64,000 nt of DNA from Marsupella aquatica (taxonomy: Eukaryota; Plantae; Marchantiophyta): the NCBI GenBank assembly GCA_973895155.1, contig OZ316899.1, positions 1 through 64,000 on the forward strand, written 5' to 3'. Numbering within the stretch: position 1 is the first letter of the stretch; each line of letters starts with the position of its first letter. Shown piece after piece: positions 1-64,000 of this stretch. Position numbers and translations under genes: made by a program. Below the pieces are notes generated by a model. The model worked only from the letters and a program-made list of their open reading frames with translations. It did not search any database and was not told where the DNA came from.

Positions 1-1993
1 CTAAACCCTAAACCCTAAACCCTAAACCCTAAACCCTAAACCCTAAACCCTAAACCTACAACCCTAAACCCTAAACCCTAAACCTAAACCCTAAACCCTA
101 AACCCTAAACCCTAAACCCTAAACCCTAAACCCTAAACCCTAAACCCTAAACCCTAAAAACCCTAAACCCTAAACCCTAAACCCTAAACCCTAAACCCAA
201 ACCCTAAACCCTAAAAACCCTAAACCCTAACCCTAAACCCTAAACCCTAAACCCTAAACCCTTAAACCCTAAACCCTAAACCCTAAACCTAAACCCTAAA
301 CCCTAAAACCTAAACCCTAAACCCTAAACCCTAAACCCTAAACCCTAAACCCTAAACCCTAAACCCTAAACCCTAAACCCTAACCCTAAACCCTAACCTA
401 ACCCTAAACCCTAAACCCTAAACCTAAACCAAACCCTAAACCCTAAACCTAAACCCTAAACCCTAAACCCTAAACCCTAAACCCTAAACCCTAAACCCTA
501 AACCCTAAACCCTAAACCCTAAACCCTAAACCCTAAACCCTAAACCCTAAACCCTAAACCCTAAACCCTAAACCCTAAACCCTAAACCCTAAACCCTAAA
601 CCCTAAACCCTAAACCCTAAACCCTAAACCCTAAACCCTAAACCCTAAACCCTAAACCCTAAACCCTAAACCCTAAACCCTAAACCCTAAACCCTAAACC
701 CTAAACCCTAAACCCTAAACCCTAAACCCTAAACCCTAAACCCTAAACCCTAAACCCTAAACCCTAAACCCTAAACCCTAAACCCTAAACCCTAAACCCT
801 AAACCCTAAACCCTAAACCCTAAACCCTAAACCCTAAACCCTAAACCCTAAACCCTAAACCCTAAACCCTAAACCCTAAACCCTAAACCCTAAACCCTAA
901 ACCCTAAACCCTAAACCCTAAACCCTAAACCCTAAACCCTAAACCCTAAACCCTAAACCCTAAACCCTAAACCCTAAACCCTAAACCCTAAACCCTAAAC
1001 CCTAAACCCTAAACCCTAAACCCTAAACCCTAAACCCTAAACCCTAAACCCTAAACCCTAAACCCTAAACCCTAAACCCTAAACCCTAAACCCTAAACCC
1101 TAAACCCTAAACCCTAAACCCTAAACCCTAAACCCTAAACCCTAAACCCTAAACCCTAAACCCTAAACCCTAAACCCTAAACCCTAAACCCTAAACCCTA
1201 AACCCTAAACCCTAAACCCTAAACCCTAAACCCTAAACCCTAAACCCTAAACCCTAAACCCTAAACCCTAAACCCTAAACCCTAAACCCTAAACCCTAAA
1301 CCCTAAACCCTAAACCCTAAACCCTAAACCCTAAACCCTAAACCCTAAACCCTAAACCCTAAACCCTAAACCCTAAACCCTAAACCCTAAACCCTAAACC
1401 CTAAACCCTAAACCCTAAACCCTAAACCCTAAACCCTAAACCCTAAACCCTAAACCCTAAACCCTAAACCCTAAACCCTAAACCCTAAACCCTAAACCCT
1501 AAACCCTAAACCCTAAACCCTAAACCCTAAACCCTAAACCCTAAACCCTAAACCCTAAACCCTAAACCCTAAACCCTAAACCCTAAACCCTAAACCCTAA
1601 ACCCTAAACCCTAAACCCTAAACCCTAAACCCTAAACCCTAAACCCTAAACCCTAAACCCTAAACCCTAAACCCTAAACCCTAAACCCTAAACCCTAAAC
1701 CCTAAACCCTAAACCCTAAACCCTAAACCCTAAACCCTAAACCCTAAACCCTAAACCCTAAACCCTAAACCCTAAACCCTAAACCCTAAACCCTAAACCC
1801 TAAACCCTAAACCCTAAACCCTAAACCCTAAACCCTAAACCCTAAACCCTAAACCCTAAACCCTAAACCCTAAACCCTAAACCCTAAACCCTAAACCCTA
1901 AACCCTAAACCCTAAACCCTAAACCCTAAACCCTAAACCCTAAACCCTAAACCCTAAACCCTAAACCCTAAACCCTAAACCCTAAACCCTAAA
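1..1993 (+). repeat. Telomeric array (CCCTAAA)n, Arabidopsis-type TTTAGGG telomere, C-rich strand on +
   Basis: About 2 kb of tandem CCCTAAA from base 1; scattered imperfect units in the first ~450 bp, essentially perfect afterwards. Confidence 0.99.
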
Positions 1994-1995
1994 CC

Positions 1996-2068
<73 letters not shown>

Positions 2069-2076
2069 CTCCCAAC

Positions 2077-2107
<31 letters not shown>

Positions 2108-2200
2108 CTCCCAACCTCAACCCTCAACCCTCAACCCTCCTCCCAACCTCAACCCTCAACCCTCAACCCTCCTCCCAACCTCAACCCTAAACCCTAAACC

Positions 2201-2231
<31 letters not shown>

Positions 2232-2853
2232 CTCCCAACCTCAACCCTCAACCCTAAACCCTCCTCCCAACCTCCCCATCCCAACCCCAACACACAACTC
2301 CCTAAACACCACACTCCTCTCAACCTCCCCATCCCAATGCCCTCAACCCCCCTCACTCTCAACCTCCTAAACCCAACTCAACACACACCTCCCCCAAAAC
2401 ACTCCTCTCAACCTCCGCATCCCAGCCCCACAACTCCCTCAACTTCCCCAACCCATCTCCAACACACAACTCCCTCAACCCCCCACCCCCCAAAACACTC
2501 CTCTCAACCTCCCCATCCCAACCCCAACACACAACTCCCTCAACCCCCCACACTCTCAACCTCCTAAACCCAACTCAACACACACCTCCCCCAAAAACAC
2601 TCCTCTCAACCTCCCCATCCCAACCCCACAACTCCCTCAACCCCCCACCCCACACACCTCCACCAAAACACTCCTCTCAACCTCTCTATCTCAACCCCAA
2701 CACACAACTCCCTAACCCCCCCACACTCTCAACCTCCTAATCCCAACTCAACACACACCTCCCCCAAAACACTCCTCTCAACCTCCCCATCCCAACCCCA
2801 ACACACTCTCAACCTCCTAATCCCAACTCAACACAGAACTCCCTAAACCCTAA
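1994..2853 (+). repeat. Telomere-variant zone: (CCCTCAA)n, CCCTCCTCCCAACCTCAA interruptions, then degenerate C/A-rich repeats
   Basis: Switch from CCCTAAA to CCCTCAA at 1994; recurring CCCTCCTCCCAACCTCAA units; degenerate CACTCCTCTCAACCTCCCCATCCCAACCCC units to ~2840; ends with two perfect CCCTAAA at 2841-2854. Confidence 0.92.
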
Positions 2854-14934: not shown

Positions 14935-15176
14935 GGCGATTTGATCGCATGCGTAAGTATGCAGAGAATGATGTCATTGTCCCGGCGAAGTTAAAAGAGT
15001 TTCTGAACGCAGAGCAAGGTGAAACCGAGGTTACATTGGGTGATGCCGAGAAGATCATCAATGAGCAGATGGCTCACGAGAATACGATATTGATGAAAGC
15101 GAAGCACTCCTTCACATTGGATGCATTCCTCCGGTACCTTCTCGACCCGGTTGTCAACATTGCTTACTTAAACAAG
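14935..15176 (+). pseudogene. Phosphoinositide phospholipase C EF-hand exon fragment (partial copy at 39511-39625)
   Basis: KYAENDV...LKEFLNAEQGE...DAEKIINE...FTLDAFLRYL matches the plant PI-PLC N-terminus; ends at donor AAG|GTGAGA; no catalytic exons follow. Confidence 0.75.
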
Positions 15177-42009: not shown

Positions 42010-42668
42010 AGCTGAACAAAGTGGGTTGGCATAGTGCCCCTAATGTGGATGTATTGTTTGGAGATTGCAGAGAGTTCATTTTTGATGAGAAGGGCCATTG
42101 AGATATTAGGCAACAGTTATCTTGTGCTTACATGTGGCTAGGTACATGCCACTAAAAACTTATCTTAAGCCTTCCATGATCTCTTCAGACTGAGCAATCA
42201 TTTTGAAAATTAATAAAATTATAAACTTATTATTATGTGTCTATGAAGTATTTAAGGCTTTTTTAACGGATGACAAATTCTTAATTTGTATAAGTTCTTG
42301 ATTCTGATTCAATGGGTAGTCCTTCATTTATAACATACTTTATATGTGTTATCACAAAACAATACTCAAGACACTATCTCCTTTTTGTATTCTGTGCAGT
42401 ATCATTCATGTCAACATTTGTACAATATTGAAGCCAGACCCAAGAAAAGAAGTGACAACTACTTTGGACAAATCAGTACCTTTGGGAAGGTGAGTACCTA
42501 AACATCAAATTTATTCCTTTCTGTCCTCCTAAATCTTAAATGGTTTGTAAATCCAATGACAAAAGTTACAACTTACGGCATTTCGGTACTCAGATCTTAA
42601 ATGGTTCGTGTACTATTTGACCGGAATTGTAATTTTTACTAAATAAATTATTTGTTCTTACATGGCAG

Positions 42669-46731: not shown

Positions 46732-49140
46732 CTATCTACTCAACAACCCTTGAGTGACAACGTCCGGCCACGAAGGAGGAGTAGGTAACCTTACTAGTCT
46801 CCTAAGTGACTTATACCCTTGAGCAGAAGAGTTCATAGCCTTATTCCGTATCAACTGTTCTCGTAGCTTAACAAGCTCTTTCTCATACTTATGCGGAACA
46901 GCATACCCTTCATGGCAGACCCAAACAGAGTATTGGTATGGCCAAGGAAATTCTGGAGTTATTGGCGGAAAAGGAGCTTCAGCACGTCGGAGGACATATA
47001 CCCAACACCAAATTTCATATTCCGAAAATTTATATCTTCTACCCTTATCAATGGGAGGAATAGCCTTACCCGGCTTATAAGTGGGAATCAACATTCGAAT
47101 ACTCGGTAGATACGTACCAGGTAAAATCTGTTGTTGTTGATGTATACTCTCCATTTCCAGATGTCGGAAAGCTATCCGAAAATCATTCTTCTCCCACTTA
47201 TGAATTGAAGCAAGGTTAGGTATAGGAATTAGGGATGGTAGTACCACTGTGTGCCCAAGTTTGGGAGGTACTCTGATAATACGAGGATCTTCGTCTTCCT
47301 CTCCATCGCTTGGAGCTCCTTTCCAACGAAAAATAATGTCTGGGTTTGAAGAAGGTATCACCGACTCCTTAGTAGGCCAACGTGATAGTACAACAGGAGA
47401 TGAAGATGCAGGAGGTGGAGAAGAATTCCCCATTGTCGTGTTGATGGGCTTCAGCTGCTCAAAATCTGGTGAATTTGATTCATGAAAGATCTGTTGATTT
47501 CTTACACGACGCAACCTTTTCCCAGGTCTTCGAGTATATGTCACTTGAAATTGCTCGGTAATAAGTGAACTCTCATCTCCAAGTGATATCCGAGTACCCT
47601 TATCTCTGCTTGAATCCAGTAAGATAGAAGCTGATGCAGAGCTAAATGCCAAATCAGGTGTTCCAGACAGAGGTATGGGTGGAGATACACTCTTGGTCTC
47701 AGGTAGCCCTAAATTGCTTGAAGGTCCGAGAGATGGAGTGGTCTGTAGACTGTGTTGAGACTCAAGTAATCTCTCTTCTGGAAGGTAAGCTGGAGAAACC
47801 CAATCAACAGATGGGTGTGGAGGAGGCCCTTTTCTCGCCAATGCTTCTGCTAACTCCTCAGACATAATCAGAGCAACTGTTATCCTGGTTTCGGGGGTCG
47901 GCCACATAGGAAATGGCATGACAAAATTAGGTGAAGTTGGTTGTCCAGCTACTCCTTCTACATCTACTATTTCGTCCTCTGAATCAGCCTTAAACAACTT
48001 TACAAGCTCTGGGCATAATACCGCCGGAGGTTCCATTGATTGTTGTACAAGAGGAACCACATCTAGGTTTGGGGAGGGACTACGAGAATCTTCCGAATTA
48101 TACTCCTGTAAAGCTTTTAAAGCATTATTACTCACTTCCATGGGTGGTGAAGCAGGGTTCTGTGAAGTTTTATCATACCCATCCGCTGCAGTAGTATATT
48201 GTTGAGGAGGTTCTCCTGGTAAGCTTTCTTCATCCACATCCATCCTGTCTTCGTCATTCGCTCTGAAAGCAAAATTGTCCTGATCAAGATCTTGATCCTC
48301 TGATGGGTGGGAAAGAATTGGCTCGTCTCTCCCGCCAACTGGTTCTCTTGTCTCTTTCAGTCTCCGAACTTCATTTACCAGCTCAGATTCTTCGCAAGTG
48401 AGTAGTTCGCATAACGCCACCAGTGTTGAACTGGATCGGACTTCTCGTACTTCCGGCAACTCATTTGCTTCACAGGTAGATGCGCTCCAATGGGTACGAT
48501 AGAAAACTTTCTCTGAAAGGAGCAGACATTTATGCTTGTGATAAATGTGAGCTAGATAGGGAGTCAAGTTGGTAAATCTCAACTTTCCAGCTTGCAACCT
48601 GCTACGAAAGTTCTTTACCTGGGTATGAATTACCCTATATAAGATCTTCGTCCAATTGATGGTCTGCTTCTGTTCTAATGAAGAGATAACGGTGGCAGCG
48701 AAAGAAAGAGTAATACGTGTCTGACTCTCTGGATAGAAAATTGGTGACAGAAATCGAAAAAGATGCTGCAAAGAGGTAACTAAACAGTCCGTGGTTACCC
48801 AACCATTTCGCCTCTTAAAGGATTCAGGAGCAAAGAAAGACTCTATATAAGCTCGGGGCTCTCCATCAATCCTCTGCAAATCCTCGCCCGTTGTCGGCGT
48901 CGAGTAGACTCCCGCTATGAGCGCTTCAGTCCAAACACTTGGACGCGAGCGGACACCGATTCCTTCCTCAGCGTCCCACACACCTTGGTCGATGAGGCTG
49001 AACTCGCACATCCTCCAAGGGAAACGAAGTAATTTCTTCAAGCCCATCAATGCAAGATTTGTCCTCAATTGTCGGCGGTCCACCATATTCGATGGGATAA
49101 TTGCGAGTATTGGTCGCGTCGTAAGTTTGGACTCCACCAT
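46732..49140 (-). CDS. Extra ORF downstream of integrase in a Ty3/Gypsy non-chromovirus element (~800 aa; plant-transposon-type N-terminal domain plus P/S-rich region)
   Basis: Intact frame, likely ATG at 49140; GLKKLLRFPW...WTEALIAGVY...GWVTTDC...FLSPIFYP...INWTKIL; same strand as and directly 3' of the integrase. Confidence 0.7.
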   Translation of the reverse strand: MVESKLTTRPILAIIPSNMVDRRQLRTNLALMGLKKLLRFPWRMCEFSLIDQGVWDAEEGIGVRSRPSVWTEALIAGVYSTPTTGEDLQRIDGEPRAYIESFFAPESFKRRNGWVTTDCLVTSLQHLFRFLSPIFYPESQTRITLSFAATVISSLEQKQTINWTKILYRVIHTQVKNFRSRLQAGKLRFTNLTPYLAHIYHKHKCLLLSEKVFYRTHWSASTCEANELPEVREVRSSSTLVALCELLTCEESELVNEVRRLKETREPVGGRDEPILSHPSEDQDLDQDNFAFRANDEDRMDVDEESLPGEPPQQYTTAADGYDKTSQNPASPPMEVSNNALKALQEYNSEDSRSPSPNLDVVPLVQQSMEPPAVLCPELVKLFKADSEDEIVDVEGVAGQPTSPNFVMPFPMWPTPETRITVALIMSEELAEALARKGPPPHPSVDWVSPAYLPEERLLESQHSLQTTPSLGPSSNLGLPETKSVSPPIPLSGTPDLAFSSASASILLDSSRDKGTRISLGDESSLITEQFQVTYTRRPGKRLRRVRNQQIFHESNSPDFEQLKPINTTMGNSSPPPASSSPVVLSRWPTKESVIPSSNPDIIFRWKGAPSDGEEDEDPRIIRVPPKLGHTVVLPSLIPIPNLASIHKWEKNDFRIAFRHLEMESIHQQQQILPGTYLPSIRMLIPTYKPGKAIPPIDKGRRYKFSEYEIWCWVYVLRRAEAPFPPITPEFPWPYQYSVWVCHEGYAVPHKYEKELVKLREQLIRNKAMNSSAQGYKSLRRLVRLPTPPSWPDVVTQGLLSR

Positions 49141-49359
49141 CGCGTCAATCGTAAAGGACGCTTCTCTTGCCGTTCCTAGAAGTGGACGCTTCTTGCAGCG
49201 TCCCGTCAAGACTAAGTTTTAGGGTGGACGCTTCTCTCAGCGTCCAGTGCAAAAACTAAAATTCCGAACACTTGTGAAGGGGGAGGGAATGCTGATTCTA
49301 ATAAAGTACAAACTACCTACCGCCCTCCACTGAAACTATGACCTGTCCCAGGTGAAACA

Positions 49360-50700
49360 CTAAATAGGAGACTCATGATATCGCTTAACCCGGAATCCAT
49401 TGATTCGGGTGTCAAGTGGGTGACCATCTAAGGTAGTCAAGGAAACCGAACCGTTATCCCAGATTTGGGTAACTCGATAAGGACCAATCCAATGGGTATG
49501 GAGTTTCCCAGGAAATAACATATAACAGGAATCAAAGACTAATGCTAAATCACCAACATCTAAATTCACGACTCGCAGCTTTTGATCATAAACAAGCTTA
49601 CGCTTGTTCTGAATTGTAGCTGTATGGTCTAACGCTAAAAGTCTAACTTCTTCTAATTTGACAATATCATAAAACCTATGTGGGAGACTAGCCGTTGGAG
49701 AGAGACGGTTGGATACCAAGAGTCGTTCTGTCGGGAAGGAGAATTCAATAGGAATAATACTGTCCAGGCCATAAGTCGGGTAGAAGGGAGTGTGAAGGGT
49801 TGTAATTTTCTCGGCAGTACGGTAAGCCCATAATGCAGAATGTAACTTCACATCCCAGTCTGTCTTGTGAGACTCTACTATCTTATTCAGGATCTTGCCC
49901 ACAATGCCATTAGCTCTTTCCGTTAAGCCATTAGCTCTGGGGTTGTAAGGAGTAGTTTTGCGATGCTTGATAAGATATGTGTTAGTAATTAACTCAATAG
50001 TTGAGTTAAGAAAATGCAAACCCCTATCGCTTACCAACTCCAAAGGACACCCGAACCGAGTAATAATGTGCTCAAAGAGAAATGCAGCAGTTGTTGTAGC
50101 ATCATTCTTGCGAGTGGCTTTAGCCTCCACCCATTTGGTGGCATAATCAGTGGCCAAAATAATGTATTTACTTCGGCTTTTTCAAGCTGCTGGTGAAATT
50201 GGGCCAATAAAATCAATACCCCATTTCTCAAATGGTGTCAAAGGCAGGATGGGCGTAAGAGGCCATTTGGAACTAGCAGTGGGTTTCCCTATTCTTTGAC
50301 AGGGGTCACACGTCTTAATAAAGTTGTAAGTATCTCTATGCATGGTAGGCCACCAGTACCCATCATCCAAAATTTTCTTTACAGTAGTATTGACAGCATA
50401 ATGGCCACGTGTTTCTCCAGAATGTAAAGCTTCAATTACTTGTGGGAGTTCCCTGTTCTCCAGACATCATCGCATCTTCTGATCAGGACCTTCTTTAAAC
50501 AAAGTGCCCTGGAGGATAGTATAAGGTCCCACCTTATGTGCAAAAACAGCTCGTTCTTCCGCATTAAGGCCTTCAGGAAAACTACCATGAATCAACATGT
50601 GCACAATATCAAAATACCGTGAAGACTCTCCTTCAATGTGCCACAAATGCTCATCTGGGAATTCATCAGAAAGATTATGCTGATTCTCTGGCCCGGGTAA
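49360..50700 (-). mobile_element. Ty3/Gypsy (Athila/Tat-related) pol remnant: H2C2 zinc finger plus integrase core, two in-frame stops, 5'-truncated
   Basis: LHSGETRGHY...GYWWPTMHRD...CDPCQR, FEKWGIDFIGP, ATDYATKWVEA, VSDRGLHF, TPYNPRANGLTER, GKLHTHWIGPY; no RT or RNase H upstream. Confidence 0.95.
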
Positions 50701-51308
50701 GATGCACGGGCATTGGGCAAGGTGAATCTTGTCAGAAGTTCACATTTGTTAGACTAGAACCATTGGGATGCACAAGCTTTGAGGTCTCCTAAGCAATCAC
50801 CAGTGCCTTTGATTTTGTCCCTAAACTAAGCAAAGTTCTCTTGTAGCATGTTAAGGGGAGCCCTCTACCTCTAAACCATGAGATCCTAAACTAACTTCAC
50901 TTGAGACATCTCTAGGTACGTAAATAGACAAACACTCATCAGGGAGGTCCAATTCTCAATTTCAGAGACAGTAGACATAGAAGTAGGCCCTATGGAGATA
51001 GATGAAATCAATAGAACTGAGAAACTAGTGGGGAGCAGGAAAACTACTCATACACAAATAGTCGCTTCCAAGTTGAAATTCCAAGTTTTAGAATAGAAAG
51101 AAAAGTGACTCTTCTATGGTAATAATGGATAGAAACCAAACAGAGATAAATAATAAGAAAAAAAACAACTAATGCAAAGATAAATTGAATTTAGGGTGAA
51201 ATGAATACAATGGGCATCATCATATATACGGGCATATATATCTCACAGCTTTATTCATTAGAATCCCCTGGGAACTCCACATGTACAGATTTTGACTTTG
51301 ATTCTTAT

Positions 51309-54300
51309 CTAACTGTAATTGTAATCAGTAAACATATCAAAGTGAATTCGCTCCGAGGTCGTGTTGTCCCTTTGATCAAGTGCAGCATATCGAGCTTCCC
51401 GGTCTTCATCTACTTGCTCTTGTCTTGCATGACACTGAGCCCATCTTCTCTTACTCATGTCATTCCTAAATGCCATTTGTCTCTCCTCTCTCTGTCCGGG
51501 GGTTTCCTCGACCATAATACCTTCCTCATTGTACAGTTTATACACACCAGGTCCTCGCTTGTCTGAAAGTTGTAATTCATCATCAATGTCCCCTTCTTCT
51601 AGGGATTGAGTAATGAGGTAGGACTTACTGACACCTGCAGCACTTCCCCATCTTAACATAGGCAGCTCACCTTTCAGAAACCCAGCTGCCACCATCAAAT
51701 TGTACATCCTAGCAGCCGAAGGCCCTGCTCGACTAAATAATTTCCACAAATCTAGACCACCATCCTCCATCTCTCCAGTAACTGAGATGCGGACATTTGC
51801 TTTCTTGCCTGACCTTCCCACAACTTCGTATAATGTTCTTGTGAAGCAGTACCATTTGAAATACCGAGGATCCTTGAGCATGTTGTTGTATGTTTCAATG
51901 TGATGGACACTCCACAACCATTTCTCGATCTGCTCCAAAAAACTTATCTGCTGATTTTTCCTGTAACTAGGTGTCATTAGTATCCGGATACTTGGATGGT
52001 GCTGCCAGATAGAAAAGTAAGTGGGGGTCGCTTCGTACATAACAGCTATTCCATCCTGTCCTTCTATTTGATCTCCCTCTTGCACTTGGTAATCCTGTGG
52101 TGGATCATGATATCCCCAAAGCAAAGCGGGACCAAAGTACTTCCCAATATTATAATTATACACACCTAGCTCTAACCATGTAATAACTACTTCCGTGGGA
52201 GTCACTGCTTCCCAATAACTACTTTTCTCCAAGTGAACCAAAGATACATCTTCGGGGTTAAAGGGGTATACATCATTTCTAAAGTAACCCCCTTGACGAG
52301 CCACCACCGCTGGGTCACGCCTCAATTCATAAAAGAACCTCATTGCCAAGTGACTAAGCTCAGGTGCAATTGGTAGATTGAAACTCATCCAATCATCAGA
52401 TACTACTATGTCAGAGGTGAAAAATGGGTTGAATGCGACAGTAACCCCGTCCCTCTCCATCTTCTTCCACTGGGCAGCCTCCAAAAATGTGATGAGTCGG
52501 GGAAGTGTATACTTCCCACAATTGATCCGTACTTCCCGAGCAGCCCACGTTTTCAATATCAAGGGCAACAACTCATATAACTTACTATAAACATCTAGAC
52601 AACATTTTCTCTGGTTATCCCTATGTGCTAATCCCTCATGAACCATATTAGCCATTGCTTTAAGTGCAATAAAAGTTTCATTTTGAGGATGCTCCCTTTC
52701 TAATTCCGACAGCATGAATTGAGCTATTCGACTGTTAGCCCGACCTCCTAATCTATAAGACAAATCCTCAGGTAATTGTACATTAATATGTCCAGACCAC
52801 TCAAAAAAAGGCAGCATGAATCTAATCCTTATGGGGACTTCATCCCAAATCTGATCCCAATCTCCAGGTCTGATGTCCCTTTTATTTACCTCTGCACTAG
52901 CCAAAATTATCCGAAGGGTTTCTAGTCCGAGGGCTTCATCAACCTCAATCGGATGCCAACCATCACTCTGCTCTCCAGACATTGTGGTCCAGTGGTTGAT
53001 GCTGATCTTTTTCAGGATCTCAACTCGTTGTTTGTTTATTGGGTCTTTCAAAGCCCCATCCAATAACTTGGTGGCTTTCTTTGCTTCATCTCTCAACTCT
53101 TGCACTCGAAGTTCCCAAGCATCATAAGCATGTCGTGGTATCCGAACATCCTTAGAATTACATTGCACCAACTCTCGCTGGGCTATTTCACCCAACCACT
53201 TCTTTCTCTCCTTCTCTCTCTGCTTGGCACTTAATTCCAATGTTCGGATATACTCCACCCTCTCCAGGTTTTGCTGCTCCAACTTTTGTAACGCTTCAAA
53301 AGTCAGTGTGAGCTGCTGGGTAGTTTCTTTTAGCGACTTCTCTATCACTGTTATCATCTGAGAGGTATGACCTGCACATTGAGAGTGAGTATGGCGCACT
53401 TTAGCAAATTCATCTTCTAATTGCAGCCGCTTCTCCTTTTCTTCTTCATATTGGCCTGAAGCCTCCTTGCTCGCTTTTTGGGCCTCCTTCAATTGTGCAT
53501 TCAACTCTCTGCCCTCTTCTTCAAAGGCAGCTACATACCGACTCAATTCTTCTGCCTTTGTGGTATTCTGAGCGTGTTGCTTCTCTGCTTCCTTCCGGAC
53601 AGTTGTCACTTCCTCTATCAGCAAAGTAATCCTTGCCTCTTTTTCTTGGGACTTCATCTCCTGCTCATGCAACATTTGTTCTCGTATCTCCACCTTCTCA
53701 TTGAGGAGTCTCACCATCTCCTTGTTTTCCTTCAGCAAACTCTCCAACTTCTCAATCCTCTCTTGGAGCTTAAGGTTGGTGTTGGCACTTATGAACAGAT
53801 CTTCTTCCTGCTGCTTTGCCTTTTCTCTCTCTCTTACCCCAGTTTCTGCTTCGAGTGCACAAATGTGGGCCAACCCGCACACTTCCTTGGCTTGATGTAA
53901 CCACAAACGCTTGTCACTTCCTACAGGGAAGGGTCGATTAATAAACTTCATCCTCTGCTCAAAGGAGGTGAGTTCAGACAGAACAACATTTGATAACAAC
54001 TCTGTCAACACTGGTTGATGGTATACATAATCAGATTGGGCAGTGGATGTCATAGCTTCTTCTTCCTCTTCGACCGGGATTATCACTCTCCTTTTCTTTC
54101 TTTTCAAGGACTTAACACACGCATTCCCCTTTATCCTCAATGTGCGTAATCCTTGTGCGCCTTCTTCATCAGAATTGTCCACTTCATCTGCACTGCTTGA
54201 GACCAGGCCCGAGACCAGGGATCCATTTGGGGCATAGAGTCTCGGATTATCTTCTTCCCCATCCTCGCTCTCCGACTCCTCCTTTTCTTCTTCCTCCTGG

Positions 54301-55046
54301 TTTGCCTCCTCTCGCTCCTCTGAATCGCTGTCCTGCAAGGAGATTATTGTGACCGCGGTTGTGATCCTATCGGCAGTGAGGGCGTGGTCCATCACTACGC
54401 TTAATACATATGCACAAATTGACGGAAACAATGGTAGCCCCTTCCTGGTTATAACACTTGCAAGGTTGCGCTTCCATATCAGCAATGGGTGAAGAGTTCC
54501 ATCTAATACTCTCTTGGCAACTGATAGTTGCTCTGGCGTTACATAATGGTACCCACTCTTGAGGATTACCCATTTAGTAAAGAACTCCACATACTTGCGG
54601 ACCTCTTGGTTTGTCATAACGCCATATTGGACCTTCTTCTCATGCTGGAGCTCTCCTCCTTGTTTTAGGAAGGCACTCATCTCTCTTCCCGTAAGTGCCT
54701 CAATTGGATAGTCAGCTGGTAGGCTGTCTGGGGCGAAAATCCCAAACAAAGTCGCTAATTCCTTGTTGGGGATGCGGTAGGCTTGTGCTCTGTATGTGAT
54801 AAACACTCCAGTATCTGCAAAATTGACATCCACAATATCTTTGTAAAGCTGACAAGCACGATCAATTGATACAAACCTATCAATTCGGACAAGCCCATAG
54901 CATCGAGCCCTTTCAAATATCTCTTTGTATTCTTCAATGAAAGCCACCTCAGAGATTGAGTTCCTCAATCTTTCTTCTGGAGTTGATCGAGGTTGTTTAT
55001 TTTTGGCTGGAGGGACCTCTACTCGGGTTTGATTTGGAGATGTCAT
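51309..55046 (-). CDS. Intact 1245-aa ORF: plant-transposon-type N-terminal domain, acidic linker, long coiled coil, unknown C-terminal domain
   Basis: Uninterrupted 3.7-kb frame; N-terminus GLVRID...LYKDI...IPNKELATLFGI resembles the other two TE-type ORFs; heptad-rich E/K/Q/L region at ~aa 400-650. Confidence 0.8.
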   Translation of the reverse strand: MTSPNQTRVEVPPAKNKQPRSTPEERLRNSISEVAFIEEYKEIFERARCYGLVRIDRFVSIDRACQLYKDIVDVNFADTGVFITYRAQAYRIPNKELATLFGIFAPDSLPADYPIEALTGREMSAFLKQGGELQHEKKVQYGVMTNQEVRKYVEFFTKWVILKSGYHYVTPEQLSVAKRVLDGTLHPLLIWKRNLASVITRKGLPLFPSICAYVLSVVMDHALTADRITTAVTIISLQDSDSEEREEANQEEEEKEESESEDGEEDNPRLYAPNGSLVSGLVSSSADEVDNSDEEGAQGLRTLRIKGNACVKSLKRKKRRVIIPVEEEEEAMTSTAQSDYVYHQPVLTELLSNVVLSELTSFEQRMKFINRPFPVGSDKRLWLHQAKEVCGLAHICALEAETGVREREKAKQQEEDLFISANTNLKLQERIEKLESLLKENKEMVRLLNEKVEIREQMLHEQEMKSQEKEARITLLIEEVTTVRKEAEKQHAQNTTKAEELSRYVAAFEEEGRELNAQLKEAQKASKEASGQYEEEKEKRLQLEDEFAKVRHTHSQCAGHTSQMITVIEKSLKETTQQLTLTFEALQKLEQQNLERVEYIRTLELSAKQREKERKKWLGEIAQRELVQCNSKDVRIPRHAYDAWELRVQELRDEAKKATKLLDGALKDPINKQRVEILKKISINHWTTMSGEQSDGWHPIEVDEALGLETLRIILASAEVNKRDIRPGDWDQIWDEVPIRIRFMLPFFEWSGHINVQLPEDLSYRLGGRANSRIAQFMLSELEREHPQNETFIALKAMANMVHEGLAHRDNQRKCCLDVYSKLYELLPLILKTWAAREVRINCGKYTLPRLITFLEAAQWKKMERDGVTVAFNPFFTSDIVVSDDWMSFNLPIAPELSHLAMRFFYELRRDPAVVARQGGYFRNDVYPFNPEDVSLVHLEKSSYWEAVTPTEVVITWLELGVYNYNIGKYFGPALLWGYHDPPQDYQVQEGDQIEGQDGIAVMYEATPTYFSIWQHHPSIRILMTPSYRKNQQISFLEQIEKWLWSVHHIETYNNMLKDPRYFKWYCFTRTLYEVVGRSGKKANVRISVTGEMEDGGLDLWKLFSRAGPSAARMYNLMVAAGFLKGELPMLRWGSAAGVSKSYLITQSLEEGDIDDELQLSDKRGPGVYKLYNEEGIMVEETPGQREERQMAFRNDMSKRRWAQCHARQEQVDEDREARYAALDQRDNTTSERIHFDMFTDYNYS

Positions 55047-57975: not shown

Positions 57976-58030
<55 letters not shown>
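57976..58030. repeat. (CT)n microsatellite
   Basis: Seen directly. Confidence 0.97.
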
Positions 58031-58334: not shown

Positions 58335-61300
58335 TTAATCCTTTAAATCTTTTGTTTGAAGGTTTCGCCACTTGTCTTTCAGATCAATCTGTGTCAAAGT
58401 CAATAAAACATGATAGATGAGCATGCAATTTGTTTTGTGTGCAAGGGTAAATACAGTAATACAAAAAGCAGGATATAACCGTAGAAGACTTACTTCAGAC
58501 CGGTCAATGAAGTGTGCACCCTCGGCAGCAAGAATTCGACTCCACTTGCCTGGTCCAAACCTGAAATTAACCTTGGCTTAGAAAACCTCTTGTTCTTAGA
58601 GAAAAACACCAATTAATACCAGCTAGGTAAGATATTACGTCAATGCATTTTGATTGATAAGTCATAGGTTCTCTACTTGCCTGCGGACTGCCTGTTTGAG
58701 ACAATTTGTTTCCTCTTTAGACCACCTTTTAGTTGCCCTACGAACACGTATTAGACCATTGGGGCCTTCTTTCATGACTGCCCGGGTGATCAATTTGGAA
58801 TTTTGTATTCCAATACAATCTTGATGCAGCCTCAACCTCTTAGATGACGGGCTGGACGTATCCTCCTTCCCTGGGCCCTGCAAAGACATCCAATTTGTAA
58901 TACTCCAGCAAGGATTGCAAACATTACAAAATACAGTACATCTTCCATACTGTACAAGATAGATGTTGTTGTCACCAATGATTAAAAACAAGAAGTTTCC
59001 TGCGGACCACCTCACCTTGGCACTCGAAGTTGCTAGATTGCCCTCCTCTGCTTTGTCTTTGGATTGGAACGGGGTGATTAGGGATCGAGAAGGAGGATTT
59101 AGCAAATCTGTAATTCGTTTTCTCCCTAAGTTCTTCCCCATATCACAAATGCCTTTGTAATTCTCACTCTGTGGGGCTGGAAGCTCAACTAATCTCTGTG
59201 CTTCCGGATGAATTAGGTGTTGGACTTCATTTGATGATTGTTGCATTTTGCTAGTAGTAATTCCTCTGTTGAGCATATTAACCTCTGTGCTCACCTCTGT
59301 CACAAAAAAAACACCACATTAGAGACTTCAATTCTCCATCAACAGCACATACAAAGACCTAGGAGTCTGAAACTACTCTATACACTATCAATCTGAACTA
59401 ATCAATGCTAGTTCTAGTGCAATTTTGGTCAAACTGTAAGACTACATATGAGTTGAACTATGACATTGGTGAGCACTACATACCATACACTGGTTGGGAG
59501 GATGCCTGCTTTGGCAACAATACAGGCGCCATGATCTGCTGGTTGGCCACCTCCAAAGGAGCTCCTTCATTCTCATCTATCAAATTCTCTTTACCTGTTC
59601 CAATCTCCACCCGCCTTTTTCTATAGTGATCCAATTTAGACTGCAAATACAACCATCCAATTAACGGAAATTATATTTCTCCACCACAATATGTATATTC
59701 ACAATGACTTGCAGCAAACAACAAATCAGTCCCAACTTTTTACCAAATCTGATAGCTAGTGAGAGAAGACAAGGCCCAAACATTGTTAAAACAATGCATC
59801 TGTCTCCTAGCCTGTGAGTGCGGGACAAAACCAATGGAAAAATCCCAAACTTTTTGTGCACCACTCCATCGAGCGGTGCAAATTAAACCAACTATTTAAT
59901 AAGACATTTAAGAAAACAATCCTTTGGAGGAGGAGGGGAAGGGAGAGAATCATGAGCTAAGTTACCCAAGGTTGATCCAAATAAATACCTGAAGCTCAAC
60001 TCGGACTTCCTCGGCAACACTTTCATACTTGTCTTTCAAAGTATCCACATCCCTACGAACTGCGGCCAAGGTGGTCACCATCATTTCATTCCTCTGTAGG
60101 AGTAGCTCCAACTTGACACCTATTGTGTTGTTTGCCTCTACTTGCATCCTCAAGTTGGTCAGTATTGTTTCGTTCCTCTCTGTCTGTAACTCCAAGGTGG
60201 TTGTCATCTTCTCATTCCAGTCTTTCTGGCGCTCTTTCTCTATTTTCAACTCACCTACAACCTCCATCAAGCACAGGCATGATGTACAACAAGATCTGAC
60301 TGTTTTTGAAGCTTCTGAAATGCTCAAGGGGAATACATTCTTTAGTGTGAATATGTCAGAGTGCTCCAGCAACTCCGTACCAGTTGTTGTCAACTCGATA
60401 CCAAATTTTGTCTTCAATTTTTCCTGTTCTCTATCCTCTGTTCCAGGTGTTGCTTCCGCTTCGCCCAATGTCTTCCCTGATATTTCATGTTCTTTACCCC
60501 CCGACAGAGGTTCTGTCTCTTGAAGACTCAATGTCTTCATGGACGTTGCATGATCTTTGTGGATTATCCCAACCTTTGTCACCATCTCATTGTCACAAGC
60601 TCGATTGAACAAAGAACCATCTTGGTGTCCGTTCACAAAAGAACCATCTTGCTGACCTTGCGGCTCTGCTCCACTAGTTGAGAATAGCCCGAGAAGTCCT
60701 CCACTGCTACATGGATCACCCTCATGCACACTAGAAACAACAGTTCCTTTCGCATGTCCTGACATTGCATCATCGTCGTTCACAATTTGCAGATGCATTG
60801 TGAGATGTTTTTGTCCTGTGCAGTTCTCCTCCATCCCGTGGTTTTCCACTCCATGATGCTCCACACCCACTTGAGTAGATGTTTTCCAATGGAATACTTG
60901 TGGCCTTGGCAAAGACACAATTGAAGGGGACTTCTCACTCAACAGAATTTGCAGATGGGATCCAAAATTGTAAGTGCAAGTCATGTTACCTTCGGAGATT
61001 TGTTTCCGGGCTCTGCAGAGGAGGTCGATCAGTCTCCCGCCAAGATATTCTCCCCAATTCTTCCTACTACTTGTTTCTTCAACTTGCTTTATCTGGCACA
61101 AAGACACATCGGCCCTGCTCCCCTTAAAGTGAAGAGCCCCCAATTGAAACTCTAGCCTCTCTCTGATTAGGGAATCTTTGCAATATTGCAATGAGTAAGA
61201 ACCATTGCTGTTCCTTTTAATCCCTGCGAATGACCTTGGATTATATCGAACTGCTTTTTGCTCAAATGGCTCCCCTGACCCTTGCAACTTGAATGTCTTC

Positions 61301-61551
61301 TTGATAGAATCCAAACTCAAGTCTATTCTTCCCCCACAAACCCATGTTTCAGATTGTTCACTGTCAAAGTTCCGGATGAAATCTATCATGTCAGACTTAG
61401 AATGACTCTTAGTGTCCCAACGAACTCCCAAAACAAAATCTGCAAGCCCATTGTGCTGAAGATATTCTGAATGTCGCGCTTGACACAATGTCGTCACCAC
61501 AAGTGGTGGGATAAAATAGAATGTTGGCATCGCCATAGGCTTGGAAGACAT
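58335..61551 (-). CDS. Six-exon gene (~772 aa): transposon-type N-terminal domain + coiled coil + C-terminal telobox Myb (TRF-like)
   Basis: Exons 61551-59989, 59640-59484, 59296-59016, 58877-58681, 58560-58494 and 58388-58335 join in frame (one GC-AG intron) to give ...RWSKEETNCLKQAVRRFGPGKWSRILAAEGAHFIDRSEIDLKDKWRNLQTKDLKD*. Confidence 0.85.
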
Positions 61552-61722
61552 CGTTGTCCCTTCTTCCCACTAGTAGGCATGTACACCAAACCTCTGGTGG
61601 CACACTATCTTGGTTTGATATCAGTTTGATATGTAGACAAATGTCATGCTAGACTGTGGTGACAATGAGAATGGTCGTGCTCCCCAGGTTCTTACAATAG
61701 TCTACGAGCCCATTACAATAGT

Positions 61723-62190
61723 GTCAATAACACCAAGTAATTAACATTCATCACCAAGAATGCTAAAATGCATTTGAGTCTGGATATTCGGGTGCTATGG
61801 TGATTGGCGCGAATGAAATCCGCCACTTCCCCGGGAAAATTCACAATGTCTATGCACACATGAACCCACTGTCCCTACTTGTCAACCTTGGGTTCAACTA
61901 GAAAGAATTGTAGGGAACTAGATCCAGAGGCACATAGACATGTACAGTAATAAATCTGGTGTACAATGTCAATAACACCAAGTAATTAACATCCATTGCT
62001 CAAAATGCTAAAATGCATTTGAGTCCAGATATCCGGTTACTATGGTGATAGGCACAAATGAAATCCACCACTTGGAGGAAGATCCACAAAGTCTATGCAC
62101 GCAGGAACCCATGTACTGTCCCTACCCATCAACCTTGGTTCAACTAAAAACAATTGTAGGGGAACTAGATCTAGAGACACGTAGCTATGT
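61723..62190. repeat. ~245-bp diverged tandem duplication upstream of the telobox gene
   Basis: TGTCAATAACACCAAGTAATTAACAT...ATGCTAAAATGCATTTGAGTC at ~61723 and ~61967. Confidence 0.88.
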
Positions 62191-63289
62191 TTTGCAATAA
62201 ATCTAGTGTGATTCAATCCGTACAATTATGTTTAACTATTCAATCTGTACAATTATGTTTAACTACAGTATAATATTCACGCTTATTCTATGATCCAAGC
62301 CGTCACCAAAGATTTGCTCTAGAGGGATAATAATGTGGATTCCTATGAATCACCTAACAAGAAGCGGGCACTAACTAAGTACAAGTGTCCCTAATTAAGG
62401 CTTCCATGCTTGAATTGGTCTTAGCCAATAGGAAGCAAGACCAAATTAACAATACTTTTTGTGTCCTCATGAATACATATATTCGAAGCTCTTAATCTAC
62501 CACCAATGCTCTCTCCCCTTGCACCAGCCTAGGTACTTACATTCTTGAGGAGACCCATCCAGTGTGTCTAGAATGTTATACACAAGCCCAGGGAGAAGGA
62601 ATTTTTTGCCCATTCCCTTTCTTTCAGTACACCTCTGTATGACATAAATTCCCATTGCGACATTTTCCTTTCTAGCATAGAGTGGGAGCCACACAAGGAG
62701 CCATGGCTCCACCCTTTCCCATTCTTTCAGTGTGCCTTTGGTGTAGAGCAGGAGCCAAATATTGGAATTGTGTAATCCTGCACACCTCTAAGCTTGAACT
62801 CAGGCAGGCTAATTTCATAGTGTGTCGGATTGGGATATGACAAAAAGCTAAAATCTCAGCCCACAAGATGCAGGTAATTAAGATTCCTTAGTTAGAAAAC
62901 CCCTCCCTAACCCTAGTACTTCCGGAATGACATACAAATGGGCATACAAAGGCCCAAAGGAAAATGAATTTTTTGCCTTTCCCAATCTTTCAGTTCTTTT
63001 AGTGCACCTTTAGCGTAGAGCAATCCAAAAGGATGAATAGGGCGTGTCAAAGTGTTACAGTCCAAATAAATAAATCAAAGTGTTATGGGATTCGTATTTT
63101 GGTAGCCCATAGTGATTTTGTCTTGACTGTAATAGTGTTTTATGACCTGAGCAATAATTGAGTTACATCTATGCAGCTTTAACACTCCTTTATGGAATCT
63201 TGGAATGAGGTGCTTGAACTTAGGTGGGCTAACTTCATGGTATGTACCTTTAGTATAAGGCAAACAAATAAAATTCCAGCAGACAGGAT

Positions 63290-63735
63290 CATCCTAATTC
63301 ACCATGTACAAATATTGAGGCGAGACCAAGGAAAGAACTGTACACTCCTTGGGACAAATCAATAGTAGATTTATGAAGGTGAGTACCTTAACATCAAAAT
63401 TCCCCCTTTCTTCCCACCTAGTACATGTTAAAATATTCATAAATCTAATGATAAAAATTACAACTTACAACTGCATTTTGGTACTCAGATCTGAAATGGT
63501 TCGTGTACTATTTGACCAGAATTATAATTTTTACTGAATTAGAATTAAAATCTTGAGAAAATTGTTTGCTACAGTGTGGGAAGATCTAAAAAAATTGACA
63601 CCATAAAATTGAAGTTTACACTTTATTGGATTCTTTATTATGAAATATTCTTGAACTTTTTGTTAGAAAAGTTCTTAAACTAAAGTCCTCAAGGTTTTGA
63701 AGGACAATGTTTTTGAATGGCTATCAAAGATGTCA
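63290..63735 (+). pseudogene. TET/JBP-like copy 4: decayed 5' fragment closest to copy 3
   Basis: Homologous to 42400-42905 (exon, AAG|GTGAGT intron, TTTGCTACAGTGTGGGAAGA...TTGAATGG); acceptor and ATG deleted, frameshifted, truncated. Confidence 0.88.
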
Positions 63736-63784: not shown

Positions 63785-64000
63785 AATGAGGGTACTCTTA
63801 TCTCTTGAGGGTACCCTTGTGCTTGAGGGTACTCTTATCAGTGAGGGTACTCTTATCAGTGAGGGTACTCTTATCAATGGGTACGCTTATCAATAATGGT
63901 ACTTTGATCAATAAGGGTACCCTTATCAATGAGGATACTCTTATCTGCTGAGGGTACCCTTGCGTATGAGGGTACTCTTATCAATGAGGATACTCTTATA
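63785..64000. repeat. 18-bp tandem array (GAGGGTACTCTTATCA(G/A)T)n running off the window end
   Basis: Seen directly; about 12 variant units. Confidence 0.95.

What the first reader, a model, noticed from the sequence alone, without database searches (positions are those of the whole stretch)
58335..61551. Transposon-type protein fused to a telobox Myb domain, 58 kb from a telomere
Seen: six exons splice in frame (phases 0,1,0,2,0; one GC donor) to a ~772-aa protein ending in a complete Myb with W-W-W spacing and the LKDKWRN telobox; the ORF track misses this because the Myb spans three exons. Known: telobox Mybs (TRF/TRFL/TRB) bind telomeric repeats, but Arabidopsis TRFL proteins lacking the Myb-extension bound poorly in vitro, and this protein stops right after the Myb. 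Inference: either a TE protein that targets or tethers its element to telomeric repeats, or a domesticated telomere factor.
Basis: partly seen in the sequence, partly recalled or inferred. Interest (0 to 1): 0.8.

Follow-up and report, generated by a model that had tools for sequence, protein, structure and literature searches.

The report
Transposon-type domain fused to telomere-binding Myb
A six-exon gene near a plant chromosome end encodes a protein that joins a transposon-derived (PMD/VANC-type) domain and a coiled coil to a telomere-repeat-binding Myb domain; the same fusion turns up in distant relatives, so it is an old, undescribed gene family rather than a chance chimera, though no RNA evidence shows it is expressed.

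Summary
The six exons on the minus strand (61551-58335) join in frame to 772 aa with phases 0,1,0,2,0 and one GC donor. The product ends in a complete telobox Myb (W719/W739/W762, LKDKWRN). The telomere array is at 1-2262.

"Transposon-type" is right by fold, not by sequence. Residues 1-212 hit no Pfam family. A confident model (pLDDT 91) matches Arabidopsis MAIN/MAIL1/MAIL2, and its only match among solved structures is the transposon anti-silencing factor VANC21 (Z 8.7).

The fusion is not a one-off:
- Three loci whose N-terminal domains are only 29-36% identical carry Myb exons downstream, cut by introns at the same two positions.
- A closer copy (L001) has all six exons but is a pseudogene.
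- Both folded domains show purifying selection (Ka/Ks about 0.3).

My best reading is a coiled-coil dimer that binds TTTAGGG arrays or teloboxes and brings a PMD/VANC-type chromatin, possibly anti-silencing, domain there.

Whether it rides on a mobile element is unresolved. One relative sits next to a large RecQ helicase. First-stage notes place a recombinase-RecQ gene about 3 kb upstream here, and two further copies of the fusion 68 kb and 147 kb beyond this window. I could not check those notes. No RNA run was available, so the splicing is supported only by comparison.

The parts
60916..61551 (-). Exon 1, first part: start codon and the PMD/VANC-like N-terminal domain (residues 1-212)
   Evidence: AlphaFold2 with 22 homologues gives pLDDT 91.2 and pTM 0.83. 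Foldseek top hits are MAIL2, MAIN and MAIL1 and PMD, DUF1985 and plant-transposon-protein clusters. VANC21 (9lnj_A) scores Z 8.7 over 201 residues. There is no Pfam sequence hit. Ka/Ks against L001 is 0.28-0.31. Several homologues start at the same N-terminus.
60280..60915 (-). Exon 1, middle: poorly conserved, probably disordered linker (residues ~213-424)
   Evidence: pLDDT is below 50 in the single-sequence model. There are 168 gap columns and 67% identity against L001, with Ka/Ks 0.73.
59989..60279 (-). Exon 1, end: long helix, predicted coiled coil (residues 425-521); GT donor at 59988
   Evidence: A single helix spans 425-520 with pLDDT about 90 even without an alignment. Over 303 nt against L001 there are no indels, identity is 78.5% and Ka/Ks is 0.43. 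Similar C-terminal helical stretches occur in P0002, P0010, P0031 and P0013.
59484..59640 (-). Exon 2 (157 nt, residues 522-574)
   Evidence: It joins in frame. Identity to L001 is 77%, against 60-64% in the flanking introns, and the AG acceptor and GT donor are conserved in L001.
59016..59296 (-). Exon 3 (281 nt, residues 574-667), linker
   Evidence: It joins in frame. Identity to L001 is 70%. The L001 copy carries a stop codon and has lost the acceptor.
58681..58877 (-). Exon 4: basic KRLR motif (possible nuclear localisation signal) and Myb helix 1 with W719; GC donor CAG|GCAAGT, phase 2
   Evidence: The same phase-2 intron position follows helix 1 in L001, L005, L006 and L002. A KRRL/KRLR motif upstream of the Myb is also seen in L001, L002 and L006.
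58494..58560 (-). Exon 5: Myb helix 2 (FGPGKW, W739)
   Evidence: Homologous exons exist in L001, L005, L006 and L002.
58335..58388 (-). Exon 6: Myb helix 3 with the telobox IDLKDKWRNL (W762) and stop codon TAA at 58337-58335
   Evidence: Identity to L001 is 85% and homology ends at the stop codon. A phase-0 intron before helix 3 is conserved in L005 and L006.
61722..62209 (.). Tandem duplication of about 245 bp (81% identity), 170 bp upstream of the start codon, in the presumed promoter
   Evidence: Its function is unknown.
1..2262 (.). Telomere array (CCCTAAA)n of about 326 copies: the chromosome end and the presumed binding substrate

Best explanation
This is a real and probably functional gene of a previously undescribed bryophyte-centred family. 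Its product has three modules. The first is an N-terminal domain with the fold of plant mobile domain (PMD) proteins MAIN/MAIL and of the transposon anti-silencing factor VANC21. The second is a coiled coil of about 100 residues. The third is a C-terminal TRF-type telobox Myb without an extension.

Proposed mechanism, all of it inferred: the coiled coil makes a dimer, as the TRFH domain does for TRF1/TRF2. The two Myb domains then bind tandem TTTAGGG repeats, either the telomere, interstitial repeats or promoter teloboxes. This concentrates the PMD/VANC-like domain on that chromatin, where it modulates silencing; by analogy with VANC and MAIN/MAIL the direction would be anti-silencing.

What is shown: the gene structure, the two domain identities, conservation of the fusion and of its intron positions, and purifying selection on the folded parts.

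What is inferred: dimerisation, telomere-repeat binding and the chromatin effect.

Whether the gene is host-resident or carried by a subtelomeric mobile element is open. I put it at roughly 60:40 in favour of host-resident.
For: - Gene model: it reproduces in frame, including a consensus GC donor.
- Myb domain: PF00249 at E 1.3e-10. The nearest solved relatives are the telomere binders TRF-A, TRF1, TRF2 and TBP1, and the helix-3 LKDxWR motif is aligned.
- N-terminal domain: the model has pLDDT 91. It matches MAIN, MAIL1 and MAIL2 at probability 1.0 and TM 0.51-0.63. It also matches PMD, DUF1985 and plant-transposon-protein clusters. Among 222 solved chains given a second look, VANC21 bound to DNA is the only one with Z of 2 or more (Z 8.7).
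- Coiled coil: a confident helix spans residues 425-520 and has no indels against L001.
- Family: 24 representative clusters hit the N-terminal domain.
- Conserved fusion: Myb exons lie downstream in L001, L005, L006 and L002, with both intron positions and phases conserved. The N-terminal domains are only 29-36% identical in the three distant loci.
- Phylogeny: all Myb-bearing lineages fall in one half of the domain tree.
- Selection: exons are 70-85% identical to L001 and introns 57-74%. Ka/Ks is 0.28-0.31 for the PMD-like domain, 0.32 for the Myb and 0.43 for the coiled coil, against 0.63-1.05 for the linkers.
- Literature: VANC binds short motifs arrayed in tandem and removes silencing marks (PMC5735166). 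PMD-C proteins oppose Polycomb at promoters that also carry teloboxes (10.1101/2024.09.27.615353). The extension-less TRFL7 is at telomeres in vivo and dimerises (10.64898/2026.01.29.702503).
Against: - No RNA evidence exists. No RNA run was listed, and the runs I laid are DNA-like.
- The window's own protein is absent from the protein collections I searched.
- The closest homologous locus, L001, is a pseudogene. It has a frameshift near residue 166, a stop in exon 3 and three broken splice sites.
- The telobox is degenerate in L005 (KDKWLGI), so not every member need bind telomere repeats.
- Arabidopsis TRFL group II proteins without the extension did not bind or dimerise in vitro (PMC4700174).
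- No interstitial telomere repeats or teloboxes are enriched near the gene.
- The PMD assignment rests on predicted structures with TM 0.5-0.66 and 10-17% identity. No Pfam PMD or DUF1985 sequence match exists in any of 22 family members.
Confidence: 0.5

Rival explanations
1. It is an accessory gene of a subtelomeric mobile or recombining element, possibly paired with the large recombinase-RecQ helicase genes. The Myb tethers or targets the element to telomere repeats. The VANC-like domain protects the element from silencing, as VANC does for VANDAL transposons.
For: - The fold is typical of TE-encoded proteins and closest to VANC21.
- In L002 and L003 a family member with Myb exons is the divergent neighbour, about 1 kb away, of a 1490-aa RecQ-family helicase.
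- First-stage notes (unchecked) place a tyrosine-recombinase/RecQ ORF 652 nt beyond this window, about 3.1 kb upstream of the gene's start. They also place two more such Myb fusions 68 kb and 147 kb further on, plus further RecQ copies.
- In organism B many diverged contigs (36 at 90-95% identity, 62 at 95-99%) lie on the gene. Summed depth over exon 1 is 4-20 times that of the flanks.
- There is a pseudogene copy.
- The neighbourhood is TE-rich: an rve integrase ORF and large unknown ORFs lie on the same strand.
Against: - No terminal inverted or direct repeats bracket the gene within 40-64 kb.
- There is no second copy in the window.
- Homology with L001 stops at the stop codon rather than at an element end.
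- Other members have no helicase nearby. L005 sits next to an F-box/kelch-like gene, and L004, L006-L009 have none.
- Deep divergence with a conserved architecture and intron positions also fits a host gene family.
- Summed contig depth is not a copy number (tool caveat).
Confidence: 0.3
2. It is an unexpressed, decaying chimeric gene: a relic of subtelomeric duplication whose open frame survives by chance or by youth.
For: No RNA support exists. The gene is not in the protein databases. The nearest copy is a pseudogene. The gene sits in a repeat-rich subtelomere.
Against: - The 772 codons across six exons are intact, and all ten splice sites are usable.
- The domains show Ka/Ks about 0.3, against about 0.6-1.0 in the linkers.
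- The same architecture is kept in lineages only 29-36% identical.
Confidence: 0.12
3. It is an ordinary single-copy TRFL (group II) orthologue whose N-terminus merely looks unusual.
For: It has a C-terminal telobox Myb without an extension, and that Myb is closest to vertebrate TRF Mybs, as reported for TRFL family 2 (10.64898/2026.01.29.702503).
Against: - The N-terminus has a PMD/VANC fold.
- The 24 homologue clusters are found through that domain, and several lack a Myb.
- There is no acidic-tryptophan iDDR motif before the Myb.
- Signs of multiple copies exist (and the notes).
Confidence: 0.03

Closest known systems
VANC21 (VANDAL21 transposon anti-silencing factor; DUF1985; PDB 9lnj)
   Same: It is the only solved structure that matches the N-terminal domain (Foldseek probability 0.99; VIA-align Z 8.7, 201 residues, rmsd 4.1). 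VANC is recruited to dense tandem arrays of a short motif (PMC5735166), which is conceptually what a telomere array is.
   Different: Identity is only 12%, and there is no DUF1985 Pfam match. VANC21 binds DNA without a Myb and sits in a MULE transposon with a transposase. Here DNA targeting is presumably supplied by an added telobox Myb, and no transposase is linked.
MAIN / MAIL1 / MAIL2 (Arabidopsis PMD-C proteins)
   Same: They are the top three Swiss-Prot structural matches over the whole domain (TM 0.51-0.63, probability 1.0). They are TE-derived domains working as host chromatin and gene regulators (PMC7156037; 10.1101/2024.09.27.615353).
   Different: Identity is 10-15%, and there is no PF10536 match. 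MAIN, MAIL1 and MAIL2 are stand-alone PMDs; the only described fusion is PMD-PP7 phosphatase (MAIL3, PMC7156037). The cited paper describes the PMD as widespread in angiosperms, whereas this family is bryophyte-centred and carries a coiled coil and a Myb.
TRFL group II / TRFL7-type telobox proteins (plant TRF2-like)
   Same: Both have a single C-terminal Myb with a telobox and no Myb extension. This Myb scores best against vertebrate TRF1/TRF2/TRF-A, as reported for family 2. TRFL7 dimerises and sits at telomeres (10.64898/2026.01.29.702503).
   Different: The N-terminal architecture is entirely different. There is no iDDR motif in front of the Myb. Orthology was not tested.
TRB / SMH telomere-repeat-binding proteins
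   Same: The telobox helix reads LKDKWRN, which from my own recollection is the TRB-type wording. TRBs bind teloboxes and telomeres and recruit PRC2 (10.1101/2024.09.27.615353; PMC10167121).
   Different: TRBs carry the Myb at the N-terminus, followed by an H1/H5 domain (PMC4700174). Here the Myb is C-terminal, and no linker-histone domain was found in exon 1.
Fungal telomere-linked RecQ helicase (TLH) genes and yeast Y' elements
   Same: A large RecQ-family ORF is the neighbour of a family member in L002. According to unchecked notes the same holds for this gene. The setting is subtelomeric.
   Different: As far as I know, those elements encode no PMD-Myb partner. I verified the linkage here in only one locus.

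Membership tests
PMD / DUF1985 (VANC) superfamily | Sequence match to Pfam PF10536 (PMD) or PF09331 (DUF1985) above the gathering score | tested here: not met
   Exon 1 gave 0 families at E up to 1. None of 22 family members hit either model, and none of 10 further members did.
PMD / DUF1985 (VANC) superfamily | The same fold as MAIN/MAIL PMD-C and VANC21 over the whole domain | tested here: met
   The model has pLDDT 91. MAIL2, MAIN and MAIL1 are ranks 1-3. PMD, DUF1985, Transposase_32 and ATHILA ORF1 clusters also match. 9lnj_A scores Z 8.7 over 201 residues and is the only chain with Z of 2 or more. Protein-language-model features point the same way at 0.86-0.89, which is a lead only.
Telobox (TRF-type) Myb proteins | A single Myb/SANT repeat with three spaced tryptophans and a helix-3 telobox motif (LKDKWRN-like) | tested here: met
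   W719, W739 and W762 are present with IDLKDKWRNL. PF00249 scores E 1.3e-10. The best PDB hits are TRF-A, TRF1, TRF2, TBP1 and TRP1.
Telobox (TRF-type) Myb proteins | Specific binding to double-stranded telomere repeats | not testable with these tools
   This needs EMSA, DAP-seq or ChIP.
TRFL group I (TBP1/TRP1 type) | A Myb extension of about 30 residues (fourth helix) after the telobox | tested here: not met
   The protein stops 8 residues after WRN764. The feature is as defined in PMC4700174 and PMC2377444.
TRFL group II, TRFL7 subgroup | An iDDR motif (acidic stretch around a tryptophan) immediately before the C-terminal Myb | tested here: not met
   The 40 residues before the Myb are basic or neutral (KRLRLHQ...KEGPNGLIRVRR) and contain no tryptophan. 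The motif is as described in 10.64898/2026.01.29.702503.
TRB / SMH | An N-terminal Myb followed by a histone H1/H5 globular domain | tested here: not met
   The Myb is C-terminal, and no linker-histone Pfam hit was found in the 521-aa exon 1.
Transposable element (any class) carrying this gene | Terminal repeats or target-site duplication delimiting a unit that contains the gene | tested here: inconclusive
   No inverted repeats of 60 nt or more lie in 40-64 kb. The only flanking direct repeats (42419-42900 and 63305-63728) are paralogous gene starts. An element could extend beyond the window.
Transposable element (any class) carrying this gene | A linked transposase, integrase, recombinase or reverse transcriptase within the same repeated unit | tested here: inconclusive
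   An rve integrase ORF at 49360-50157 lies on the same strand 8 kb downstream but was not shown to belong with the gene. A RecQ helicase is adjacent in L002. The recombinase-RecQ ORF next to this gene is known only from an unchecked note.
Transposable element (any class) carrying this gene | Many dispersed copies in the genome | tested here: inconclusive
   There is one copy in the window. Many diverged contigs appear in organism B but depth is flat in run X1 of organism A. Two further copies are known only from notes.

The most novel reading that the evidence does not exclude
The PMD/VANC-like-coiled-coil-telobox protein and the large tyrosine-recombinase/RecQ helicase are the two genes of a new class of plant subtelomeric element. 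The helicase-recombinase moves or recombines the unit among chromosome ends. The telobox protein docks it on telomere repeats and keeps it free of silencing. This would be a plant counterpart of fungal telomere-linked-helicase/Y' elements, with its own telomere-targeting factor.
Probability: 0.15. Interest if true: 0.9.

Novelty: new variant of a known kind. Interest (0 to 1): 0.62.

Why it matters
PMD and VANC-type domains are known as transposon proteins that plants have repeatedly domesticated as chromatin regulators. How they find their targets is still debated. In this family evolution has bolted one of them onto a well-understood DNA-reading head, the telobox Myb, and kept the fusion across deep divergence.

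That gives a natural experiment. It predicts a PMD-type activity acting at telomere repeats or teloboxes, the same motif through which TRB proteins recruit Polycomb.

It also extends PMD-like domains to bryophytes, and it adds a fourth architecture to the plant telobox proteins (TRB, TRFL group I, TRFL group II).

If the link to RecQ/recombinase genes holds, it would point to an undescribed kind of subtelomeric element in plants.

Tried and rejected
- **Word-indexed homologue search.** It found nothing, either with exon 1 or with a 24-sequence alignment. The exhaustive HMMER search was needed instead.
- **Single-sequence AlphaFold of exon 1.** Uninformative apart from the coiled coil.
- **RNA evidence.** Both run searches gave no RNA-Seq run. 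The one read-laying run returned DNA-like contigs only.
- **Paralogue in the window.** None found. HMMs of the N-terminal domain and of the Myb found no second copy. A weak hit of the domain HMM to the 1245-aa ORF falls in its low-complexity columns, and I discount it.
- **TE ends.** No convincing terminal repeats.
- **Helicase linkage beyond L002.** The L005 neighbour is unrelated to the L002 helicase and looks F-box/kelch-like by eye. No helicase lies in L001 or L004-L009.
- **DNA for the closest intact relatives.** The P0001 cluster (50% identity) had no DNA available, nor did P0042.
- **Organism identification.** An LRR-kinase ORF gave only hits of 50% identity or less, spread across land plants. 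A literature search for the run accessions found only unrelated papers.
- **Local binding sites.** No teloboxes or interstitial telomere repeats are enriched near the gene.
- **Literature.** I found no description of a PMD-Myb fusion.
Full report
**1. The observation**

The gene lies on the minus strand. The long ORF 61551-59962 (529 aa) is exon 1. I located the splice sites by motif and joined six exons: 61551-59989, 59640-59484, 59296-59016, 58877-58681, 58560-58494 and 58388-58335. The result is a 2319-nt CDS of 772 codons plus a stop.

Exon start phases are 0,0,1,0,2,0. Donors are GTATTT, GTATGT, GTGAGG, GCAAGT and GTAAGT, and every acceptor is a pyrimidine-rich ...CAG. The one GC donor has the context CAG|GCAAGT, which from my own knowledge is the usual context of GC-AG introns.

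The window opens with 326 copies of CCCTAAA at 1-2262. The gene therefore sits 56-59 kb from a plant-type telomere.

**2. The Myb**

The last 62 residues are assembled from three exons. They score PF00249 at E 1.3e-10. Against solved structures they score best with zebrafish TRF-A, human TRF1 and TRF2 (E 1e-8 to 1e-6), then with plant TRP1, TBP1 and RTBP1.

The tryptophans are W719, W739 and W762, and helix 3 reads IDLKDKWRNL. The protein ends eight residues later, so it lacks the Myb extension that defines TRFL group I (PMC4700174). It also has no acidic-tryptophan iDDR motif in front of the Myb, unlike the TRFL7 subgroup (10.64898/2026.01.29.702503).

By position and length it resembles TRFL group II, and by wording of the telobox it resembles TRB. 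The rest of the protein resembles neither.

**3. The N-terminus**

Exon 1 has no Pfam hit, and the word-indexed homologue search found nothing. Protein-language-model features pointed to DUF1985 and PMD clusters at 0.86-0.89, which is only a lead.

An exhaustive HMMER search of 1.84 billion representatives found 24 clusters, nearly all matching residues ~1-230. None of 22 members matches Pfam PMD or DUF1985 by sequence.

With these homologues as an alignment, AlphaFold2 gave a confident model of residues 1-230 (pLDDT 91.2, pTM 0.83). The structural matches were:
- In Swiss-Prot the only significant matches are Arabidopsis MAIL2, MAIN and MAIL1 (probability 1.0, TM by query 0.51-0.63).
- In the AlphaFold DB clusters the top 30 are dominated by PMD, "plant transposon protein", DUF1985 and ULP1-type proteins.
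- The ESM Atlas adds Transposase_32, ATHILA ORF1 and DUF7745.
- Among solved structures the single real hit is VANC21 bound to its target DNA (9lnj_A; Foldseek probability 0.99).
- VIA-align gives that hit Z 8.7 over 201 residues. It is the only one of 222 chains with Z of 2 or more.

As a sequence family, however, this is a separate and uncatalogued branch.

**4. The rest of the protein**

Residues ~213-424 are poorly conserved and predicted disordered. Residues 425-520 form one long, confident helix even in the single-sequence model. I read that helix as a coiled coil.

**5. Comparative support for the gene model and for selection**

L001 is a 4.2-kb Logan contig that holds a homologous locus with all six exons. 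It aligns end to end, including the introns.

| Region | Identity to L001 | Ka/Ks |
|---|---|---|
| Exons (all) | 70-85% | - |
| Introns | 57-74%, with many indels | - |
| N-terminal (PMD-like) domain | 81% | 0.28-0.31 |
| Coiled coil | 78.5%, no indels | 0.43 |
| Myb exons | 76-85% | 0.32 |
| Linkers | - | 0.63-1.05 |

(Values.)

L001 itself is a pseudogene. It has a frameshift near residue 166, a stop in exon 3, donor 4 changed to AC, acceptor 6 changed to AA, and acceptor 3 deleted. Homology ends at the stop codon, and the downstream flanks are unrelated.

**6. The fusion is a family trait**

This is the main new result. Loci of three distant members carry Myb exons downstream on the same strand:
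- L005 (P0030, 29% identity in the N-terminal domain)
- L006 (P0003, 36% identity)
- L002/L003 (P0005, 33% identity; a 60% GC metagenome scaffold)

Each has a helix-1 exon ending in phase 2 within the same codon. Each has a helix-2 exon of the FG.GKW or HGERW type. In L005 and L006 a helix-3 exon follows a phase-0 intron at the same place.

The teloboxes read CKDRWRNL in L006 and the degenerate IKDKWLGI in L005. L002 ends before that exon.

Other members show no Myb: L008, L007 (only 1 kb of downstream flank), and the intronless Calypogeia fissa genes L004 and L009. Ten further proteins, seven of them annotated Calypogeia proteins, show none either.

In a tree of the N-terminal domains, all Myb-bearing lineages fall in one half. 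The split is only weakly supported (79/87). This is compatible with a single acquisition of the Myb.

A chance chimera or an annotation artefact would not reproduce the same three-exon Myb behind the same domain in lineages this far apart.

**7. Copy number and context**

There is one copy in this window. The four public runs holding the sequence behave as DNA:
- In run X1 of organism A the depth is flat; in the other organism A run (X2) it rises several-fold over part of exon 1.
- In organism B, 199 contigs were laid on the gene in run X3. Of these, 62 were 95-99% and 36 were 90-95% identical.
- In organism B the summed depth over exon 1 and exon 4 is 4-20 times that of the flanks.

This suggests several diverged copies, although the tool warns that depth is not a copy number.

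First-stage notes on the same genome describe two more "retroelement domain + telobox Myb" genes 68.5 kb and 147 kb beyond this window's end. They also describe tyrosine-recombinase/RecQ ORFs, one starting 652 nt beyond the window, which is about 3.1 kb upstream of this gene's start codon. I could not read that DNA, so these remain leads.

Independently, in L002 the family member is the divergent neighbour, about 1 kb away, of a 1490-aa protein. Residues ~898-1221 of that protein are a RecQ-family helicase core (RECQ5 at 2e-30).

The link is not general. The L005 neighbour is unrelated to the L002 helicase and looks F-box/kelch-like by eye. No helicase lies in the other loci.

Inside the window no terminal repeats bracket the gene. 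An rve integrase fragment and two large unknown ORFs lie 3-12 kb downstream on the same strand.

**8. Mechanism**

I infer that the coiled coil dimerises the protein. Paired Myb domains would then give it affinity for tandem TTTAGGG repeats, as homodimerisation does for TRF1 and TRF2. The PMD/VANC-like domain would then be concentrated there.

Three published results make a silencing-related role at telomere repeats or teloboxes the most economical guess:
- VANC proteins localise to dense tandem arrays of a short motif and remove silencing marks (PMC5735166).
- PMD-C proteins MAIN, MAIL1 and MAIL2 counteract Polycomb at promoters that often also carry TRB-bound teloboxes (10.1101/2024.09.27.615353).
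- The extension-less TRFL7 is at telomeres in vivo and forms dimers (10.64898/2026.01.29.702503).

None of this is shown for this protein. The earlier in-vitro failure of TRFL group II to bind (PMC4700174) and the degenerate telobox of L005 are genuine cautions.

**9. Verdict**

The thing is a new architectural variant combining two known kinds, the PMD/VANC superfamily and the telobox Myb. It is conserved as a family in bryophyte-type sequences. I found no description of it in the literature I could search.

Missing RNA evidence and the unverified helicase linkage keep the score moderate.

Noticed in passing
L002:143-4615 (minus strand; identical in L003): A 1490-aa single-ORF protein has a RecQ-family helicase core at residues ~898-1221 (RECQ5 at 2e-30) behind a 900-residue N-terminal region with a weak OrsD/C2H2 zinc-finger hit. 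It is divergently adjacent to a member of the N-terminal-domain-plus-Myb family on a 60% GC metagenome scaffold. It resembles fungal telomere-linked helicases.
   Followed up: partly
window 46732-55046 (minus strand): An rve integrase-core fragment (49360-50157, E 1e-6) is flanked by two large ORFs of 1245 aa and 825 aa. Neither has a Pfam hit, and both show only weak language-model resemblance (0.76-0.83) to plant TE accessory proteins (PMD, Transposase_32, ATHILA ORF1). No reverse transcriptase was detected.
   Followed up: partly
window 13047-15336 vs 35566-39785; 17081-17559 vs 43561-44033; 42419-42900 vs 63305-63728: Segmental repeats occur within the subtelomere. Blocks of about 2.3 kb are 89-96% identical and 22-24 kb apart. 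More diverged paralogous pieces (72-87%) include the starts and ends of the ORFs that first-stage notes call TET-like.
   Followed up: no
window 41329-42009 (+): A 226-aa ORF has three NSD-type PHD finger hits below the Pfam cut-offs (E 5e-5 to 6e-4), directly upstream of the 454-aa ORF at 42669-44033 that has no Pfam hit. This matches the first-stage note about a PHD reader next to a TET-like gene.
   Followed up: partly
window 9426-11482 (minus strand): ORF pieces of an LRR receptor-like kinase (LRR_1, LRR_8 and the start of the kinase domain) lie only about 7-9 kb from the telomere array. The best database hits are at most 50% identical and spread over all land plants, so the source species could not be named.
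   Followed up: partly
window 2259-2814: Directly inside the telomere array there are degenerate C-rich tandem repeats (periods 31-173 nt, 61-92% matches) that still contain CCTAAACCC-like pieces. This is a telomere-associated transition zone.
   Followed up: no
window 61722-62209 and 57976-58030: A 245-bp tandem duplication (81% identity) starts 170 bp upstream of the gene's start codon. A perfect (CT)27 microsatellite lies about 300 bp downstream of its stop codon.
   Followed up: no
window 63787-63999: An array of an 18/36-bp unit (TGAGGGTACTCTTATCAG-like, about 12 copies) runs off the end of the window, next to the repeated block 63305-63728.
   Followed up: no
L004, L009 and proteins P0013, P0016, P0017, P0019, P0020, P0024, P0033-P0037: The liverwort Calypogeia fissa has at least a dozen annotated paralogues of the N-terminal domain family. 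Some cluster on one contig. At least one is intronless, and none has a Myb. This is a lineage-specific expansion of the Myb-less form.
   Followed up: partly
L001 and L008 (both from run SRR18067352): Two family members from the same run differ strongly in GC content (41% against 53%) and in sequence (26% against 75% identity to the window protein). The run either holds more than one organism or a genome with very heterogeneous composition.
   Followed up: no
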